Assembly (NCBI RefSeq): GCF_006345805.1
Contig: NC_043001.1
Location: 72,354,001-72,418,000, forward strand
Direction: 5' to 3'
Length of the DNA: 64,000 nt
Source: Octopus sinensis
Lineage: Eukaryota
The notes under the pieces are model-generated. The model was not told the DNA's origin, did not search any database, and was given only the letters and a program-made list of their open reading frames with translations. Numbering within the stretch: position 1 is the stretch's first letter; each line of letters opens with the position of its first letter. Position numbers and translations under genes: made by a program. This document shows positions 211 to 56,345 of this stretch, piece by piece.

Positions 211-1065
211 ACATATTGGTAAAACGGTAAGATAACAAAAGAAAGAAAGAGACCTCAATATTATGTAAATAGAGGAAATTTATCTATACAATAATATGTT
301 ACATTACTCGATAGTCAAGATAAAACTCTGAGTTTCAGATGCCGAAGTGGAAATCCACAACACCATCTTCGGTTATCTGGCTATTTGAAAACGCTATGAA
401 AAAATACCGTTATATAAAGGGAAATTACTGTGTTATAACTCTGCTTGCCTGCGTACTTATACATCGCTCGCATTTTTCGTCATAAAAATTATATAACAAT
501 ACATAAAAAATATATAAAAAATATATAAAAATATATATCTTCTTGGGACATAACATAGAAAGCATGTTCTATCTGTTTTCTTTAGGGGACCAAAAATGTA
601 ACAGAAATTTAGTCACATGTGGGCATGATCCGAAAAGTTCTGTCCTTGTGTTTAGACATGTAGTAGGGTCTAAGCTGCTTTTCCAGATAAGCCATCTCTC
701 CATGTCACATAGACCGCACCTTCCGCTGCCGTTTGTATAGGGCTTACATCTGGCCAAAATCTTCCAATGTATGTTATAATTGACACCTTTATCTCTTAAA
801 GACCAAATATGATTAGATAATTGTGTCGCTTTTCTTTTGTTCCAGTGCCTAAAGCTCAAAGTGTGGTTATTGAACCTGGCCTTGAAGTTACCCTCTGTAA
901 GGCCCACGTATTTCTTCGTCGAAACGGTGTCTTTAGTGGTTATAGAGTTTACGGTAGCTTCATATATGATAGTCTTGGAGATGGTGTTGTGGATTTCCAC
1001 TTAGGCAGCTGAAACTCAGAGTTTTATCTTGACTATCGAGTAATGTAACATATTATTGTATAGAT
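211..1065 (-). mobile_element. 5'-truncated Penelope-like element (GIY-YIG 3' end + pLTR) with inverted 5' pLTR segment, flanked by (TA)n
   Basis: GIY-YIG ORF remnant at 569-978; 282-367 and 979-1065 form an ~86-bp inverted repeat; homologous to the copy at 37398-38986. Confidence 0.85.
569..978 (-). pseudogene. GIY-YIG endonuclease C-terminal fragment of a Penelope-like element
   Basis: IIYEATV...KYVGLTEGNFKARFNNHTLSF...TQLSNHIW...RCGLC...LNTRTELFGSCPH. The ORF-track N-terminus (MEIHNTIS) comes from the inverted pLTR, not the real protein. Confidence 0.85.
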
Positions 1066-9740: not shown

Positions 9741-10593
9741 TTATTATTTTTTTTGTGGGGGTGGTCTAAATAACATTCAACATATACCTTTTACTTGTTT
9801 CAGTCTATGGACTGCTGCCAAGCTGGGGATACCGCTTTGAAGGGTGTAGTCGAACAAACTGACTCAAGTAGTAATTTTTTTAAAGTTTGACGCTTATTCT
9901 ATGGATATCTTTTGTTGAACCCTTAACTTATTGCGATGTAAACAAACTAATACCGATTGTCAAATGGTGATTGGAGGCAAACACAAATACACATTCATAG
10001 ATATATATATACATACATGGTTAACGTGTCGTTTAGTCATAATAAAGTGAAAGTAAATTGTACGGAAAAAAATTGCGATACACTGCAAAAGTAACGGCAA
10101 TGGCATATCTGATAGTGGGGTGGTGGGCTTCAAGTGCAGGGGTTTCATCTACTTCTATACTCATGAAGTTGTTAACCATTCACTCAATTTCGTTGATCCA
10201 AACTACGACAGCATCCATACACAGACTGTAGATGGGGGCGATGGTTGCTCACCATGAAAGAACTAAGGCGGAATGTGAGACTAGTGATGATTTATTTACT
10301 ATCATCATCAACATGTGTGACGATACGAATTTAGAAATCGGGAAAAAACATTTACGAATCTCATTTCATGCATCAATAACTATTGTGTTTTTCCATAAAT
10401 GTAAATGTTTTCATCTTATAAAAAATATATGTACGGTTTTCATGTTATATGAAATATATATATGCAAGTCCTAGATATTCGTTATGTCAGTGGTGACTTG
10501 GGGACAACATTTTGTCCCAGAATTTAATACTAAATTAGAGGTGCGACTTATATACGAGTAAATACGAATATATATATATATATATATATATAT

Positions 10594-11158
10594 ACTAGAC
10601 GAGCAAAACGCCCCCCCCGTCCGATGAACGGTGCTGAATCATATCTGCTGAATAAAAAGCAATCAGTGTTTTCTTTTCATTAAAAAATAATTATGCATGC
10701 CTTTGTTTCAATAAAACTTTTGGTTTTGTTAAACGAAGTTAATGCAAAAAAAAAAAAACTTCTTGAGAAACCAATTAGTCTTTCCTTCCTTCATGCCAAG
10801 TTTGAAGAAAATATCTTTTTGCATCTTACTTTTTTGGTCTCTTAAATATACTGCATTTTGTGGCATTGTTTCAAGCCAGCCGGCTTTTTTTTGCGCAAAC
10901 TACACGTGCATTTTTCTCGTGTACGCGTAGTATCGATTGCAACAGCTGATGTACTTGCGCGTACAAATGCACGTTCCCACGGCTTTATCGATCGCATTCT
11001 CACCCGGAATCGATTTTTGTATTTTTTAAAGACTTATACACGCCCTGATACCGTCGGTATCTACATATCAAATTTGAGCGCAATCGAATGGAGGATGCCC
11101 GAGATCCTAGAAGACACACACGCACACACACAGACAGAACGGATTTTATATAATAGAC
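10594..11158 (+). mobile_element. Putative non-autonomous rolling-circle (Helitron-like) element
   Basis: Starts ACTAG..CCCGTC after (TA)n; ends AAATTTGAGCGCAATCG...CACAGACAGAACGGATTTTATATAATAGA. Layout resemblance only. Confidence 0.45.
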
Positions 11159-11465: not shown

Positions 11466-12390
11466 CACACACACAAACACAAAAATTCTCCAGACATTTA
11501 GCTGTTATTTTTAGCATATCGAGTTCCGTGATCCTTTTGCTACGCATATCAGACAAAACAGCCACTCATTTTCACTTTTAGATAACGGGATGGGGTGGCG
11601 AGGGGTGTGTGGATCAATTTTGGAGGTTTTCATAAAAAATTTGAAATTAAAATTTGTGCCCCCCGCCATATTCTTAATCTCTGTATTTTCCAGGTATATT
11701 GAAAAAACAATTCGAAAAAAGTAAAAGATTTGGGGGTGAGGGAAGAGGAAATAAAAAATTTGAAAACGTGGCTTTTTGCATATTCGGAATCTCCGTCATC
11801 GAAAAGAGGCATATCTTAGGAATCTGGTGAAAAAAAAATCGGAAAGGTGGGAGTGGGGCTGACTGTGCGCCAGGTCCACCTACACACACATACATATATA
11901 TATATATGTATATATATATATACACACACACGCACATAATATAATACACACACACACACACACACACACATAAAACTAATAAATACACTTAAAGACACCA
12001 ACTCACGTAAAAGGAAACACTCTCAACTCTTCCACACACACAAAATAGAAAAACTAATGTAACAGAATTATATTGCAAATATATTTAATCTACCGTGTAA
12101 ATTTGTTTTAGCACCAACACATAATCCAAATATATAATACATACAAAACAATCCAATGATATAATACATATTATAATGGTATGTATTAGCACAAACGCAT
12201 AAAATTTAAATAATTTGGATAGCAAGTCCAATTAACAAATGTATTGTGGTTCAGTTTCCAATTAACGAAATATTTTGTTGAGTGGGTCCAATAATCAAAT
12301 ATTATTAATATATGATATATATTATTGTTAAGTGTTCCGACTCGTGAAATACTTCAACATTAGAAGCATCAGTAATGCGGACTATTGTGG

Positions 12391-13242
12391 TTACTGCTTT
12401 ATTTCTTCTCTATGCGCTTTGAAACGTAATTCTTTGGTCATAGTCGAACTTACAGAGGCGAGATGTCCAGAATGGTTATTCTGATTATGTATGTCGTTAA
12501 GCCGGACATTGAGTTGAGTCATAAGTTGATGTAGTTCAAGTTTTAGACCATATTCTTTCAATACTGAACAGAGCGTTTGAATAAAACAAGATCTGTCCTT
12601 TGTACGAGACTCCGAACAAAACCCGGAAGAAACAGTCAACAGATTTGCCCATAACGGAATCGTCGTATAATTAATCGATTTTTTAAAAAACCCGAATAAT
12701 CCATCATGTTGGACGTTAACTTTTACAACAGGACTAGTATCAACGATGAAGAATTTTGGTTTTGCAGCGAGAGTCGAATTTTCTTTTTTAATTAGTACTT
12801 TCAACAGAGAATCAAAACTAACGAAATTATCCGTGCCGTATATGTAGTCATCGTCTTTGCTATAAGTTAATATTGCGCATACAAAACAGCTATAATCATT
12901 ACTATGCTCCGACAGACTGCTTATTAGATCTTTCATCTCTGTTACACTTCGATCCTTACGGAAAATAATTTTAAAGTTTAAAAACGTCAGAGCTTCTTTC
13001 AGGTCTTCCGCATCTCTTTGAGAATTTATTCGTGGAGCTATTTCAGTATGAGAATCAAAACAGTTGTAGATAATAAGAGCCAGGCCGGGTTTGGTGGAGT
13101 TAGTGTCACACTCTACTGTAAAATGGCACTTTGAGTAATTTTTACTGAACTGCTCCGAGGAATTACTGGTAGAACTTTCTTGTTGAAAGTTAGAACATTT
13201 CTTATAGACCCCATCGGTTGGTTTCGCATCACTGTAATCCAT
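12391..13242 (-). CDS. Single-exon caspase-3/7-like protein (283 aa), predicted catalytically inactive
   Basis: p20/p10 motifs GLALIIYN, RxxSQRDAEDL, SCFVCAILTYS (SHG to TYS), KPKFFIVDTSP (QACRG to DTSPV), SCFIQTLC, STMTKELRF; no stops or frameshifts; probable start MDYSDAKP at 13242. Confidence 0.88.
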   Translation of the reverse strand: MDYSDAKPTDGVYKKCSNFQQESSTSNSSEQFSKNYSKCHFTVECDTNSTKPGLALIIYNCFDSHTEIAPRINSQRDAEDLKEALTFLNFKIIFRKDRSVTEMKDLISSLSEHSNDYSCFVCAILTYSKDDDYIYGTDNFVSFDSLLKVLIKKENSTLAAKPKFFIVDTSPVVKVNVQHDGLFGFFKKSINYTTIPLWANLLTVSSGFCSESRTKDRSCFIQTLCSVLKEYGLKLELHQLMTQLNVRLNDIHNQNNHSGHLASVSSTMTKELRFKAHREEIKQ

Positions 13243-13531
13243 AATTAGAATAACGTGCTTTATATATTCAGGCAAAATGTAGACGATGGAAAAAATGTAA
13301 TAATATATAAAGTTAGAAATCAAATATTGTTAAAGAGATAAGTTTGAGCATTAATAGCAGAATAAAAATACGGCACCTATTTACAACTAAATAGGTTTAA
13401 TAATGTGAGCGAGACATGTACTGAATAAGTGACATTTGATGTCAAATTGAACTGTTTCATAATTATAGAAAGTTCTCAACGTCACATCCGTTTGACTTTG
13501 TTTGTATGTACGTACGTACGTACGTACGTAC

Positions 13532-13562
<31 letters not shown>

Positions 13563-14182
13563 TGTATGTATGTATGTATGTATGTATGTATGTATGTATG
13601 TATGTATGTATGTATGTATGTATGTATGTATGTATGTATGTGTGTGTGTGTGTGTATGCATGTGTGTATGTATGTGTGTGTGCGTGTGCGTGCGTGCATG
13701 CATTTATATGTATAACATAGAACAACCGCCTGACAACACGGTTATTCTATTTGGTTGTTGAGTAAACTCAGTCTAGTTGTGTTGTTTAGTAATTTATTAC
13801 TTAGCTAGCTAGTTGTACAATATTCCCCCATCTCACTCGCTATCCTTCGGAGCAACGCCTTTTCCATTTTGTCTGCTGGTGCCATGAGAAATGATTCTTT
13901 CACCTGCACGATATTCACTAAGAGTTCAGAGTACTTGATTCCACGCAAAAAATCCGAGTTTTATTATTTTTTTCTTAGTGAAAATTGTGCGGGTGAAAGG
14001 ATCAAAATTTACCAATGTTTCAATATTGTGAGATGCAAAATTCTTCGTTAGGATTTCCTTTAGAAACGCACTCTCTGAGAAAATGAAATGCAATTAAATT
14101 TTTTTTAATTAAAATGTAAAATATATACAAAATAAATGATGTCCGACATGTTTGTTTATATTTGCGAGTGCCCGTTTTCCGT

Positions 14183-14398: not shown

Positions 14399-14500
<102 letters not shown>

Positions 14501-52739: not shown

Positions 52740-53200
52740 GATGGGCTACAGCAAATATTCTACTCAATACCACAGATTTGCTTGTTAGTTGTTTGACCCT
52801 AACCAGTTGACCATGTCCCTTAGTGGCTGACGATATGTGCATCTCTGATCACGAGCAGAAGTAGTTGGGTAGCATCGTAGCCATGTGTTGAGAGGGATTC
52901 TTTGGGGTTTGAATAATTCACCTCTGGAAACATGGGTGTTTCGTTCAACATCCTTAAACAACCTTTATTCAGGGACCTTTTGAGCGGGATGGGTTACTCG
53001 ACCAGAAGAAAATTCTAACTGGGCTCCATCTGCAAGGTTATGTGCTGTTTATCTTGATATGAGATCATCATGTCGCGCACATATGGTTGTGATGCATGTG
53101 CCTAGTGTGCCCTTATCAGACGGGTAGCCATGATGGGTATACTGGGCTTCGTATATTTTAACCCAGTGTCCCTTTGATGGCATGCATTGCTCTCTCACTC
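52740..53200 (+). mobile_element. Element X, 5'-truncated copy ending CTCTCTCACTC-(TAA)n
   Basis: Reverse complement of about 30485-30945. Confidence 0.75.
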
Positions 53201-53269
<69 letters not shown>

Positions 53270-53299
53270 GGCAATGATGATGATGATGATGATGATGAT

Positions 53300-55830
53300 A
53301 ATAGAAAATAAGAGAAAGGATTTGTCAATCCTTAATGAAATTAGTAGACAATCAACACTACTAAGCAACAAGAAGAGAAGGAAAATACTACGTAAATACA
53401 AAATTACAGAACAAGATATACCTGAGGTAAAAGAACAGCTAAAACTAGATATCTTCACCAAACCACAAAGAATCTGCCTGTATGAGAAACGCCAACGTTT
53501 CTTTAGACAAAACAAACAGTTCATCTCCAACCTCAAAAGATTCTACCCAGAACTTGGCAAAAATAAACTAGAGATCAATGCAGCACTAACAACAGAAGTG
53601 GAAGAATTTTGGAAAGAAATATGGTCGGTGAAGGAACAACCTCAGAAGAAATCTATCAAAACAATGAACACAGCACCTGAACAACTCTGGACCCCTATAA
53701 CAACTGAAGAGGCCACCCAGGTACTGCAAAAACTAAGTAACTGGAAGGCACCCGAACACAACAAGATCCCCAACCTCTGGTTAAAATAACTAACAGGAAC
53801 ACATAAAAAGCTGGCTGAGAAATTTAATGAAATACTAGCAGAGCCAGAGACAATACCTGAATGGCTCACGGAAGGGAAAGCTATCTTAATTCCCCAATCC
53901 ACTGAAACGGCAAACCCACAAAATAACTTGTCTCCCTACAATTTACAAAGCCTTTAGGGCAATAATATCGCAGAGAATGGGAAAAGATCTAGAAGAAAAC
54001 AACTTGTTTCCAGAAGAGCAGAAGGGATGCTGCAAGGGCTCATACGGCTGTAAAGATCAGCCATAACTGAAGACAGCCGCAGAAAGAAGAAGGGTCTGGA
54101 TCAATTACCGAAAGGCTTTTGATAACACTAGCCACGAACAAAGTAGCACCAGTGATCATAAAATATATAAAACATTCCATGTATAAATGGCAGACAGTTC
54201 TGCAGCTCCAGACAAAAGAGGGACTCATAAAAACTAAAGCAGACCTCATTAGAAGAAGAATATTTCAGCGAGATATACTACAGACAGTACATAGATTTAT
54301 CAAAGAAATAAAGATGAAATTTGTGCATTCCTGAAAAGAGGAAAACTAGTTAAGAGTAGCAACATCACACTAGCTAAAGCAAATGAAATAAGAGAATTAG
54401 ACCAAAGCCAGGCATACAAATACTTAGGAATCAATGAACTAGATACGATACAACAAACACGAATGAAAGAGAAGATAAAATGGAATACTATCGACGAGTC
54501 AGATTAGTACTGAAAACAGAGCGCAATGCGAAAAACAAGATAATAGGTATCAACCCTCTGGCCGTCCCAGTTATAAGTTACAGCTACAATATTCTTAACT
54601 GGACTCTAAATGTACTAATCAAAATGAACAGGAAAACAAGAAAAATAATGACAGGATTTAGGATGCACCACCCAAAATCTGACATAGAAAGGCTATATAT
54701 ACAACATATCGAAGGTGGTAGAGGCCTTATACAACTAGAAAACTATTACAAAATAACCATCATATGATTACAGACATACCTACTTCAGAAGCAAGGAAAA
54801 TTAATACAAATAGCCAAAATACATGAACAAAACAAAAAAATTGTTTTCAGTCTTTAAGGAAGCTGACAAATATAAAAAAGAATAGTACCTAACAACTATG
54901 AAAAAAAAAAGAAGAAACAATAAAACCTGTAAAACAACTGAAATCCAAACTAAAGCTTGATCAGCATCGGATCATGATAAAACGATGTCAAGAAAAACCC
55001 CTTCATGGCAAATATTGGGTTAAGCTAAACAGAAAAGAAATAGACAAAACAAAATCTCAACAATGGCTGAGAAGCTCAGGACTCAAAGCAGAGACTGAAG
55101 GACTTTTAATTGCCGCACAAGATCAAAGCCTTCCTACCAGAAATCACCAAAAACATGTAATGAAAAGAAATACAGCAAGTAACTGCAGAATATGTGGAGA
55201 TGGAGAAGAAACAATAAATCATATTGTCTCTGGCTGCTCAGTCCTGGTTAAGAAGGAATATATTCACAGACACAGCAGAGTTGGGACCCGCATACACTGG
55301 AAGCAATGCCAACACTATAGAATAACAACAGAAAAAGATGGTATAGGCACACATCAGAAAAGGTCACAGAAAATGAGAAAGCAATCATACTATGGGATAT
55401 GCTAATACACACAGAGAAATTAAGACCAAGAGGCCAGATATAGTTGTCAGAGATAAGCAAGAAAAAAATTGCTTTCTAATTAATGTATCAATACCAACAG
55501 ATGACACTGTTTCTCTAAAAGAAATAGAGAAACTTTCAAAATACAAAGACCTAGAAATAGAGGTAATTCGAATGTGGAGTCTAAAAACCAGAAACAATTT
55601 CTATCATAATAGGCGCATTAGGTATGATAAAAAATATTCAGACAGATACATAACACCAGGGCTAATAAATATATATAACGTACAGAAAATAACACTGCTA
55701 GGCACCGCACACATTCTACGTAAAGCACTTTCAATACAGTGAAAATAAAAGCACCACAACAAACCACAGCACATACCCAAGACACATAGAATGCCCGAAA
55801 TTGGCACAACGCGAATACTAAAGACGCCTT
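53300..55830 (+). mobile_element. Longest R4/Dong-clade copy, frameshifted, with an internal RT deletion
   Basis: LSNWKAP, LFPEEQKGCCKGSYGCKD, IFQ.D, GGRGLIQLE, KPLHGKY, GLKAETEGLLIAAQDQSL, CRICGDGEETINHIVSGC, RPDIVV..K; preceded by (TAA)n. Confidence 0.9.
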
Positions 55831-55859
55831 GACAATGTGGCAAGAATGAGTCATTGGGA

Positions 55860-56345
55860 GTTCTGTGGAAATCACGGCCTATAAAGAGCAAAGATGTGCT
55901 ATGAGCAAACTCCAGGAGTCACCAAAAATGATAATTGCAAAATCCTGTGGGATACAATGATCCAGTGCGATCACCCGACCAGACATCGTAAACCGGACAT
56001 TGTTGTGGTGAATAAAAAAGAAAGAACATGTATGATAATCGACATAGCATGCCCCGGTGACAACAGGATCAATGTGAAAGGAGAAAAAATAAACAACTAT
56101 GACGATTTGAAGTGGGAAATACGAGGGTTTTGGTCAATGAAGAGAGTAGATGTGATACCAATAGTAATTGGCGCACATGGAAGTATCAGCTCTCAACTTC
56201 CAGCATGGCTGAAAAAGATTGGTGCAAGTGTAAAGGTAGAACATCTTTGCATAGTTCTTGAAGCATGACCAGTTAACAAGTATCACCTTAGTCTGCTGGT
56301 GGCTGACACTTTCCATTATACCAACAAAATAAGATGTCTGATTTC
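55860..56345 (+). mobile_element. R4/Dong 3' fragment (RLE domain + 3' UTR + TAA tail)
   Basis: KILWDTMIQCDHPTRHRKPDIVVVNKKERTCMIIDIACP..YDDLKWEI. Confidence 0.85.

What the first reader, a model, noticed from the sequence alone, without database searches (positions are those of the whole stretch)
12391..13242. Intact, intronless pseudo-caspase lacking both catalytic residues
Seen: a 283-codon uninterrupted frame aligning by eye along the full caspase-3/7 p20+p10. The catalytic His-Gly (caspase-3 H121-G122) reads Tyr-Ser, and QACRG (C163) reads DTSPV. The substrate-pocket arginines (PRINS, SESR), a putative intersubunit Asp (VQHD-G) and the C-terminal dimer strand (STMTKELRF) appear kept. Known: dead caspase homologues such as cFLIP regulate active caspases by heterodimerisation. 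Inference: an unbroken ORF with both dyad residues replaced fits a selected decoy or regulator better than a decaying retrocopy. The single coding exon suggests retroposition, and a CTAAC/polypyrimidine/AG stretch upstream may mark a 5'UTR intron.
Basis: partly seen in the sequence, partly recalled or inferred. Interest (0 to 1): 0.72.

Follow-up and report, generated by a model that had tools for sequence, protein, structure and literature searches.

The report
Conserved catalytically dead octopus caspase paralogue
This octopus gene encodes a full-length copy of a cell-death protease (caspase-3/7 type) that has lost both catalytic residues yet has stayed unbroken in at least three octopus species, so it is most likely a non-enzymatic regulator of the known "decoy caspase" kind and not a decaying gene copy.

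Summary
Window 12391-13242 (minus strand) is an unbroken 283-codon ORF with a full caspase domain (Pfam E=4.8e-25; best solved relatives are caspase-7 and caspase-3). The catalytic His-Gly reads Tyr127-Ser128, and QACRG reads DTSPV.

Two orthologues keep the same replacements: O. bimaculoides XP_014771451.1 (86% identical, same genomic position) and an unnamed octopod (76%). Assembly error is therefore excluded.

Whole-gene dN/dS is about 0.8 and cannot be told from 1. The ORF is nevertheless clearly under selection:
- Neutral simulation gives P about 0.0015 for no stop codon on the three branches.
- Frameshifts are absent where about 4 (closest pair) to about 12 (whole tree) are expected.

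Constraint is lopsided. The p20-like half drifts (omega 0.93). The p10-like half, which carries the dimer strand, is constrained (omega 0.38, p=0.009). Active paralogues do not show this pattern.

The retroposition inference is not supported as stated, because every close octopod relative examined, active or dead, is also single-exon. One of the two "kept" pocket arginines is off by one position and is lost in one orthologue.

A second, older dead-caspase lineage exists in Octopus and Argonauta. Expression and mechanism remain untested. Verdict: a new member of a known kind (pseudo/decoy caspase), of moderate interest.

The parts
12391..13242 (-). Complete single-exon CDS (283 codons plus TAA) of a catalytically dead caspase-3/7-like protein
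   Evidence: Orthologues at 86% and 76% identity.
13099..13242 (-). Short prodomain (residues 1-48), predicted disordered. The N-terminal DxxD motif (DYSD, residues 2-5, 13228-13239) is shared with the active paralogues (MDYVDA) and reads DSAD in the third orthologue.
   Evidence: pLDDT below 50; alignments. Pfam finds no CARD or DED.
13021..13035 (-). PRINS. Arg71 is the equivalent of the conserved L1 arginine of the S1 pocket and is retained in all three orthologues.
12859..12864 (-). Tyr127-Ser128 (TAT AGC) in place of the catalytic His-Gly
   Evidence: Identical in all three orthologues.
12727..12741 (-). DTSPV (residues 168-172) in place of QACRG. Ser170 (AGT) lies opposite the catalytic Cys, or Thr169 if the register shifts by one.
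   Evidence: The stretch AAKPK.F.VDTSPVVK is invariant in the three orthologues.
12700..12714 (-). VQHD|G (residues 177-181), the putative intersubunit processing site. It is conserved in three species and aligns with IMHD|A of the active octopus paralogues.
12676..12699 (-). Hypervariable, disordered linker just after the putative cleavage Asp (LFGFFKKS / LFPSKEKS / GSLYKKGS). It is the source of the apparent positive-selection signal.
12421..12669 (-). p10-like half (residues 192-274), including helix alpha4 (219-231, invariant) and the beta6 dimer strand STMTKELRF (12421-12447). This is the only part under significant purifying selection.
   Evidence: omega 0.38, p=0.009 against 1; conservation table; contrast with paralogues
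13243..13265 (-). 23 bases directly upstream of the ATG (ATATAAAGCACGTTATTCTAATT), identical in all three species. It reads either as a 3' splice acceptor (...ATAAAG|CACG) after a pyrimidine-rich tract (13269-13298) and a CTAAC-like branch point (13312-13318), or as a TATA-like box placed too close to the ATG.
   Evidence: Not tested with transcripts.
12084..12089 (-). ATTAAA candidate polyadenylation signal 302 nt after the stop, conserved in O. bimaculoides. No poly(A) tract follows it.
13499..13679 (.). (TGTA)n microsatellite that bounds the conserved upstream block of about 255 bp

Best explanation
The ORF is a lineage-specific (Octopodidae) paralogue of the octopod intronless caspase-3-like effector caspases. 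It lost catalysis (His to Tyr, Cys to Ser or Thr) and most of the substrate groove before the three sampled species split. It has since been kept as a translatable full-length protein.

Shown:
- It has the caspase fold.
- The dyad is lost in three species.
- It sits at the same genomic position in O. bimaculoides.
- Selection has acted against stops and frameshifts.
- Purifying selection is confined to the p10-like half, which carries helices alpha4/alpha5 and the beta6 dimer strand.
- The two caspase-processing-like motifs are conserved: the N-terminal DxxD and xQHD|G in the linker.

Inferred: the protein acts without enzymatic activity through its small-subunit/dimer-interface half. Most likely it pairs with, or competes for partners of, the active caspase-3-like paralogues, and it may itself be cut by them. 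This would tune effector-caspase activity up or down, as decoy caspases do in insects.
For: - Fold and family.
- Dyad replacements identical in three orthologues.
- Orthology by collinear flanks.
- ORF integrity. About 4.4% of random substitutions would create a stop, and the simulated P(no stop on three branches) is 0.0015. Non-repeat indels run at 5.8 per kb in the flanks, which predicts 4.2 frameshifts in the CDS for the closest pair. One in-frame 3-bp indel was observed (P(0 frameshifts)=0.014). The whole tree is about 3 times longer.
- Internal control: sister copies in the active cluster do carry stops or frameshifts.
- Regional selection: p10-like omega 0.38 (p=0.009), against p20-like 0.93. 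The active paralogues show p20 0.25-0.42 and p10 0.30-0.55, with no such asymmetry.
- The most invariant elements are alpha4 (100%), beta4, beta5, alpha5 and beta6.
- Phylogeny places the gene inside an octopod clade together with the active caspase-3-like genes.
- Precedent for regulatory dead caspases: PMC7768685, PMC4840389, PMC12292325.
Against: - Whole-gene omega is 0.80 and not different from 1; the closest pair gives 1.29.
- The CDS substitution rate (6.4%) equals that of the flanks (6.8%).
- The p20/p10 partition was chosen after seeing the conservation table. Only three sequences were available.
- There is no expression evidence of any kind. The third orthologue comes from a contig that looks genomic.
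- The S1/S2/S4 pocket residues are largely gone, so substrate-like binding at the old active site is unlikely.
- Effector caspases are stable dimers whose two active sites work largely independently (established knowledge). A dead partner therefore need not inhibit.
- The reported in vivo role of the nematode dead caspase CSP-3 was not reproduced (PMC3591282).
Confidence: 0.55

Rival explanations
1. Competitive (decoy) substrate and not a dimer partner. The protein is kept because its DxxD and xQHD|G sites soak up an upstream or executioner caspase and so delay cleavage of real substrates.
For: Both motifs are conserved in the three orthologues and align with the likely processing sites of the active paralogues, while the residues just after the linker Asp vary freely.
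Against: A decoy substrate needs only short motifs. It would not explain purifying selection spread over the folded p10-like half. No cleavage data exist.
Confidence: 0.2
2. Neofunctionalised binding protein outside caspase regulation, for example an immune bait or scaffold. It would use the caspase fold only as a stable frame, and the fast-evolving p20 surface would reflect conflict with a pathogen factor.
For: The p20-like half and the prodomain evolve at omega of about 1 or above. The whole octopod clade evolves fast and duplicates in tandem. The site test M2a against M1a gives p=6e-5.
Against: The positive-selection signal disappears (p=0.15) once the disordered linker and the C-terminal tail are removed. 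Three taxa give little power. No partner is known.
Confidence: 0.15
3. Functionless pseudogene (dead duplicate or retrocopy) whose ORF is intact by chance.
For: Whole-gene omega cannot be told from 1. The substitution rate equals that of the flanks. The gene sits alone among repeats and transposon remnants. There is no expression evidence.
Against: P is about 0.0015 for no stop, multiplied by P of about 0.014 (closest pair) down to about 3e-6 (whole tree) for no frameshift. The only CDS indel between the window species and O. bimaculoides is in frame. The p10-like half has omega 0.38. Truly decaying copies in the same family do show stops.
Confidence: 0.04
4. Still an enzyme with a changed mechanism, with Ser170 as nucleophile or with RNA editing restoring the dyad.
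For: Ser lies opposite the catalytic Cys in the ungapped alignment, and the DTSPV loop is invariant. Cephalopods edit mRNA heavily (established knowledge).
Against: The general base is Tyr and not His. Gln161, Arg207 and both Trp equivalents of the groove are lost. A-to-I editing of TAT, AGC or AGT gives Cys, Gly or Gly, never His at 127 or Cys at 170.
Confidence: 0.03

Closest known systems
Insect decoy caspases, e.g. Aedes aegypti CASPS18 (paralogue of CASPS19)
   Same: A short-prodomain effector-type caspase paralogue that arose by duplication, lost critical catalytic residues and is retained. Such proteins are described as regulating a paralogous active caspase (PMC7768685 citing Bryant et al. 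2010; PMC4840389).
   Different: It arose independently in a mollusc, with no orthology. CASPS18 enhances its partner; the direction of any effect here is unknown. No functional or expression data exist for the octopus gene.
cFLIP(L) / CFLAR, the vertebrate pseudo-caspase
   Same: A full caspase-like domain without the catalytic dyad that works by pairing with an active caspase (PMC12292325).
   Different: cFLIP derives from an initiator caspase (caspase-8/10-like) and depends on tandem DEDs for recruitment. The octopus protein has no DED or CARD and belongs to an effector caspase-3-like clade.
C. elegans CSP-3 (and CSP-2)
   Same: Caspase homologues without an active site, reported to restrain CED-3. 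CSP-3 consists essentially of the small-subunit part, which parallels the constraint here lying in the p10-like half (PMC3591282 and the references in it).
   Different: The octopus protein keeps a full p20-like half. The in vivo anti-apoptotic role of CSP-3 was not reproduced by Denning et al. (PMC3591282).
Octopod 'lineage B' dead caspases (O. bimaculoides 'caspase-3' P0162, O. sinensis P0166, Argonauta hians P0067/P0032)
   Same: Same octopod clade, also single-exon, also without His (Arg/Gln/Val) and Cys (QNANT/QNADT/QTASP), and under purifying selection (omega 0.26-0.35 between Octopus and Argonauta).
   Different: Only about 25% identical to the window protein. This lineage is older (shared with Argonauta), has lost Arg71 and the linker Asp motif, and shows no p20/p10 asymmetry. 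Whether the two lineages share one inactivation event is unresolved.
Bivalve caspases with dyad substitutions (e.g. Crassostrea gigas Cg3A, His to Tyr)
   Same: A molluscan caspase-3/7-like protein with Tyr at the catalytic His position, noted in a family survey (PMC7836458).
   Different: Cg3A keeps the Cys (QSCRG). It is not orthologous, and its function is likewise unknown.

Membership tests
Peptidase C14A (caspase) fold/domain | Significant match to the caspase domain profile over p20 plus p10 | tested here: met
   PF00656 E=4.8e-25, 89 bits against a cutoff of 21.4, profile positions 2-231 of 233
Peptidase C14A (caspase) fold/domain | Caspase alpha/beta fold | tested here: met
   The AF2 model matches caspase-7/3/6 structures: probability 1.00, TM(target) 0.8-0.89
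Active caspase (enzyme) | Catalytic His in the (S/T)HG motif | tested here: not met
   Tyr127-Ser128 in three species
Active caspase (enzyme) | Catalytic Cys in QACxG | tested here: not met
   DTSPV; there is no Cys in either possible register
Active caspase (enzyme) | Basic S1 pocket (Arg in L1, Gln before the Cys, Arg of SWR) | tested here: not met
   Arg71 is kept, but Gln is replaced by Asp (or Val). The SWR Arg falls opposite Ser212, and the neighbouring Arg213 is Asp in one orthologue.
Effector (caspase-3/7-like) subfamily | Short prodomain without CARD, DED or PYD | tested here: met
   The only Pfam domain is PF00656, and the N-terminal 48 residues are disordered
Effector (caspase-3/7-like) subfamily | Groups phylogenetically with effector caspases | tested here: met
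   It lies inside an octopod clade (95/86 support) with the QACRG-bearing caspase-3-like genes. The best PDB hits are caspase-7 and caspase-3.
Pseudo/decoy caspase (functional class) | Dead paralogue of an active caspase that is retained by selection | tested here: met
   ORF-survival simulation and indel deficit; p10-like omega 0.38, p=0.009. Whole-gene omega is not below 1.
Pseudo/decoy caspase (functional class) | Binds or regulates an active caspase | not testable with these tools
   This needs co-expression, pull-down and activity assays. Only the conserved beta6 strand and p10 constraint point that way.
Pseudo/decoy caspase (functional class) | Expressed as RNA and protein | not testable with these tools
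   No transcript data were available. The NCBI model XP_014771451.1 is an automated prediction. The SRR11869391 contig is collinear with the genome.
cFLIP/CFLAR family | Tandem death effector domains N-terminal to the pseudo-caspase domain | tested here: not met
   No DED is found. The prodomain is 48 residues.
Processed retrogene | Intronless copy of a multi-exon parent | tested here: not met
   All close relatives examined have single-exon coding regions: P0155, P0156, P0159, P0161, P0162, P0166, P0067, P0015
Processed retrogene | Poly(A) remnant and target-site duplications | tested here: not met
   No A-tract follows the ATTAAA signal, and no flanking direct repeats were noticed. At this age they could have decayed.

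The most novel reading that the evidence does not exclude
Octopods may run a dedicated regulatory layer on a fast-duplicating, intronless caspase-3-like gene cluster. It would have two parts:
- at least two long-lived dead-caspase lineages, namely the Octopodidae-specific one in this window (constrained only in its dimer-forming half) and an older one shared with Argonauta;
- 'active' cluster members in O. bimaculoides whose only defects are TAG/TGA codons at conserved Trp positions. These would be read as Trp after A-to-I editing, giving editing-gated executioner caspases.
Probability: 0.1. Interest if true: 0.7.

Novelty: new member of a known kind. Interest (0 to 1): 0.42.

Why it matters
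Dead enzymes that regulate their active relatives recur in cell-death control: cFLIP in vertebrates, decoy caspases in mosquitoes, CSP-2/3 in worms. None has been described in cephalopods, whose apoptosis machinery is barely characterised.

This gene is annotated automatically as 'caspase-7'. It would be counted as an active executioner in gene-family surveys and expression studies, so flagging it (and lineage B) as non-catalytic corrects that.

The lopsided constraint, with a free p20 half and a constrained p10 half, gives a concrete testable hypothesis about which surface carries the function.

The case also shows that a dN/dS near 1 does not by itself mean a pseudogene. ORF-integrity statistics and regional analysis can reverse that reading.

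Tried and rejected
1. Positive selection. M2a against M1a was significant (p=6e-5). The sites lie in the disordered linker 181-190, where adjacent codons carry multi-nucleotide changes, and in the C-terminal tail. Without them p=0.15. Rejected as not robust.

2. RNA-editing rescue of the dyad. The codons TAT, AGC and AGT cannot become His or Cys by A-to-I editing. Rejected.

3. Retrocopy hallmarks. No poly(A) tract was found, and the relatives are all intronless. Origin by retroposition specific to this gene is not supported.

4. TATA-box reading of the conserved TATATAAAG (13258-13266). It sits only 16-24 nt before the ATG, so a start about 30 nt downstream would fall at or after the ATG. It is less likely than a splice acceptor, but this was not tested.

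5. A single origin for dead lineages A and B. The tree joins them weakly (66/58), and the alternatives are not rejected (p-AU 0.43 and 0.18). Unresolved.

6. More orthologues. Two word-indexed searches and one exhaustive HMMER search found only three lineage-A sequences. The next hits are 40% identical or less.

7. Identity or type of run SRR11869391, and any paper citing it or XP_014771451: nothing found.

8. Other caspase copies in the window: none by tblastn. The other long ORFs are microsatellite-derived or transposon remnants.

9. IAP-sponge idea. The neo-N-terminus after D180 would start with Gly (GLFG/GGSL) and not with the Ala of IAP-binding motifs. No support.

Full report
**What is there**

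Window 12391-13242, read on the minus strand, is an uninterrupted 283-codon ORF ending in TAA. It lies in the longest stop-free run in the 64-kb window: 312 codons, against at most 176 in 30 shuffles. It is the only long ORF not made of microsatellite or transposon remnants. tblastn finds no second caspase copy in the window.

The protein matches the Pfam caspase domain over essentially its whole length (PF00656, E=4.8e-25). Its best solved relatives are human caspase-7 (E about 3e-21) and caspase-3. An AlphaFold2 model (45-sequence alignment, mean pLDDT 72.7, pTM 0.74, core blocks 80-94) has the caspase alpha/beta fold. Foldseek returns caspase-7/3/6 structures with probability 1.00 and target-normalised TM 0.8-0.89. 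The prodomain (1-48), the L1 tip and the linker 180-189 are predicted disordered.

- Catalytic His-Gly. HMMER against PDB and three MAFFT alignments put caspase 'SHG' opposite 'TYS': Tyr127 (TAT) and Ser128 (AGC).
- QACRG. The same alignments put it opposite 'DTSPV', with Ser170 (AGT) opposite the Cys. The protein is one residue shorter just before this motif, and Argonauta relatives read QTASP/QTTSP. A register shifted by one (Thr169 opposite the Cys) is therefore possible. Neither register contains a Cys.
- Arg71 (PRINS) aligns with the conserved L1 arginine.
- The second 'kept' arginine is not kept in the strict sense. The SWR arginine aligns with Ser212. Arg213 is the next residue, and it is Asp in the third orthologue.
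- Further groove losses: Gln of QACRG is Asp, both groove Trp residues are lost (Glu211, Cys219), and the L3 and L4 loops are shortened. The old substrate groove is therefore largely dismantled.
- VQHD|G is conserved in all orthologues and aligns with IMHD|A of the active octopus paralogues.
- An N-terminal DxxD (DYSD, or DSAD in the third species) mirrors MDYVDA of the active paralogues.
- The C-terminal strand STMTKELRF matches SMLTKELYF.

**Relatives**

A search of 5.8 billion proteins found two orthologues:
- Octopus bimaculoides XP_014771451.1, auto-named 'caspase-7' (86% identical).
- A protein from a 1.4-kb contig of run SRR11869391, species unknown (76% identical).

Both keep LTYS and VDTSPV. 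The O. bimaculoides locus is collinear with the window for kilobases on both sides, so the genes are positional orthologues. Three independent assemblies agree, which excludes an assembly error.

An exhaustive HMMER search of 1.84 billion representatives found nothing else above 40% identity.

A profile search then recovered the octopus caspase-3-like genes with intact SHG/QACRG (about 35% identical, N-terminus MDYVDA...). It also recovered a second dead lineage, 'B'. In lineage B:
- O. bimaculoides 'caspase-3', O. sinensis and Argonauta hians are represented.
- His is replaced by Arg, Gln or Val.
- QACRG reads QNANT, QNADT or QTASP.

In maximum-likelihood trees the window lineage (A), lineage B and the active genes form one octopod clade (95/86 support) with an unresolved three-way split. 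Lineage A sits on a very long stem (1.45-1.68 substitutions per site). AU tests reject none of the three resolutions.

**Is it selected?**

By substitution pattern alone the answer is unclear.
- Nei-Gojobori dN/dS is 1.29 against O. bimaculoides and 0.55-0.64 against the third species.
- A three-taxon codon model gives omega 0.80, not different from 1 (p=0.27).
- CDS divergence from O. bimaculoides (6.4%) equals that of the non-coding flanks (6.8%).

The reading frame tells a different story.
- 4.4% of random substitutions in this AT-rich ORF create stops. Simulating the inferred number of substitutions on the three branches leaves all three ORFs open in only 0.15% of runs.
- Indels outside simple repeats occur at 5.8 per kb in the aligned flanks, and 38 of 44 are not multiples of three. 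That predicts 4.2 frameshifts in the CDS for the closest pair alone. The CDS has a single 3-bp in-frame indel (P(0 frameshifts)=0.014).
- The full tree is about three times longer, so the joint probability of three intact ORFs under neutrality is of the order of 1e-8.
- As an internal control, sister copies in the active clusters do carry stops and frameshifts.

Splitting the protein at the natural subunit boundary resolves the paradox.
- The p20-like half (49-172) has omega 0.93.
- The p10-like half (192-274) has omega 0.38, significantly below 1 (p=0.009). It also has fewer variable residues (15 of 83 against 39 of 123, Fisher p=0.036).
- Helix alpha4 is invariant, and beta4, beta5, alpha5 and beta6 are 83-86% invariant.
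- The active paralogues show no such asymmetry (p20 0.25-0.42, p10 0.30-0.55).
- Lineage B is constrained in both halves over the deep Octopus-Argonauta split (0.26-0.35).

Caveats: the partition was chosen after seeing the conservation pattern, and only three sequences were available.

An apparent positive-selection signal (M2a against M1a, p=6e-5) comes from the disordered linker and the tail, where adjacent codons carry multi-nucleotide changes. It vanishes without them (p=0.15).

**Gene structure and origin**

The coding region is a single exon, but so are those of every close relative examined:
- active O. vulgaris and O. bimaculoides genes, which sit in tandem clusters;
- lineage B genes, one of them inside an intron of a tropomodulin-like gene;
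- the active Argonauta sister gene.

Intronlessness therefore predates lineage A and says nothing specific about how this copy arose. In O. bimaculoides the gene lies 42 Mb from the active cluster on the same chromosome. No poly(A) remnant follows the conserved ATTAAA signal 302 nt after the stop.

About 255 bp upstream, up to a (TGTA)n microsatellite, are conserved in all three species. The last 23 nt before the ATG are identical. They contain ...ATAAAG|CACG after a pyrimidine-rich tract and a CTAAC/TTAAC element. The alternative TATA-box reading places the box too close to the ATG. The active and lineage-B genes also have AG-ending, pyrimidine-rich stretches about 15-25 nt before their ATGs. 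Without transcripts this remains a plausible but untested detail.

**Mechanism**

Shown: a folded caspase-like protein without the dyad and with a degraded substrate groove, kept open by selection, with constraint concentrated in the half that forms the dimer interface, and with both processing-type Asp motifs retained.

Inferred: it acts through protein-protein contacts of that half. Most likely it pairs with the active caspase-3-like paralogues or competes for their partners, and it may be cleaved by them. This is the 'decoy caspase' logic described for insects, where the decoy can even enhance its partner (PMC7768685, PMC4840389), for cFLIP (PMC12292325), and more contentiously for nematode CSP-3 (PMC3591282).

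The direction of the effect cannot be predicted. Effector caspases are stable dimers with largely independent active sites, so a dead partner dilutes activity and need not block it.

Rivals are a pure decoy substrate, a new binding role unrelated to caspases, chance survival of a pseudogene, and altered catalysis. I consider the last two very unlikely. A-to-I editing cannot restore His or Cys from the observed codons.

**Novelty**

I found no paper describing dead caspases in octopus or other cephalopods. A squid survey lists one non-Cys pentapeptide without comment (PMC9389742). A bivalve survey notes dyad substitutions, including His to Tyr in oyster Cg3A (PMC7836458).

The class is well known, so this is a new member of a known kind. 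Two features add modest interest: the half-protein constraint, and the coexistence of two dead lineages beside a rapidly duplicating active cluster.

Noticed in passing
L007:3001-3786 and L003:10001-10867 (O. bimaculoides CM046605.1, about 97.30-97.33 Mb); L004:1864-2733 (O. vulgaris): Both O. bimaculoides 'active' caspase-3-like genes have an in-frame TAG exactly at the conserved Trp of the SWR motif. One of them, and a decayed O. vulgaris copy, also have TGA at the Trp of GSWFIQ. The frame downstream stays conserved to the normal stop. A-to-I editing would read UAG/UGA as Trp, so these could be editing-dependent caspases, or simply young pseudogenes, since TGG to TAG/TGA are single transitions.
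   Followed up: partly
L005:3001-3798, L006:3001-3792, L010:1001-1768: A second, older lineage of catalytically dead, single-exon caspase-3-like genes is found in O. bimaculoides, O. sinensis and Argonauta hians (LT[RQV]G; QNANT/QNADT/QTASP). It is under purifying selection (omega 0.26-0.35 across Octopus-Argonauta). The O. bimaculoides copy lies inside a tropomodulin/leiomodin-like gene on the opposite strand.
   Followed up: partly
L004:1864-2733 and 10001-10867; L008:3001-3867 (O. vulgaris OX597818.1, about 54.37-54.44 Mb): The active caspase-3-like genes are intronless and lie in tandem or near-tandem arrays. Intact copies (P0155, P0156; dN/dS 0.64 between them) sit next to a copy broken by several stops.
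   Followed up: partly
protein P0017 (Logan contig, organism unknown): Another short-prodomain caspase homologue with Tyr at the catalytic His (SYG) and QADPQ in place of QACRG. It branches outside the octopod clade, so it is an independent dead caspase in some other animal.
   Followed up: no
protein P0032 (Argonauta hians GAB1601997.1): This lineage-B protein carries the segment 'VHMNG[KR]PTIFTDS' both at its N-terminus (twice) and inserted in the L3 region. It may be a gene-model artefact or a real internal duplication.
   Followed up: no
window 54974-55405 (+), 53187-56268 (+), 569-1000 (-): Transposon remnants surround the gene. One ORF has a zf-RVT (reverse-transcriptase zinc-binding) match (E=6.5e-6), flanked by further ORFs without a Pfam match. 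One ORF has a weak, sub-threshold GIY-YIG match (E=0.003). No other host gene was detected in the window.
   Followed up: partly
window 13499-13679, 14402-14500, 11890-11970 and many other sites: Dense microsatellites ((TGTA)n, (AT)n, (AC)n) generate many spurious ORFs of 100-150 codons on both strands. They also inflate the raw indel rate in interspecies alignments: 34 of 78 flank indels lie in simple repeats.
   Followed up: yes
window CDS against L001, compared with L005 against L006: Synonymous divergence between the window species and O. bimaculoides is 0.054 for this gene (9 synonymous differences; flanks 0.068). The lineage-B gene gives 0.149 between O. bimaculoides and O. sinensis. The counts are small, or the species pairs differ. 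The window's species was not identified; its contig is 135.9 Mb.
   Followed up: no
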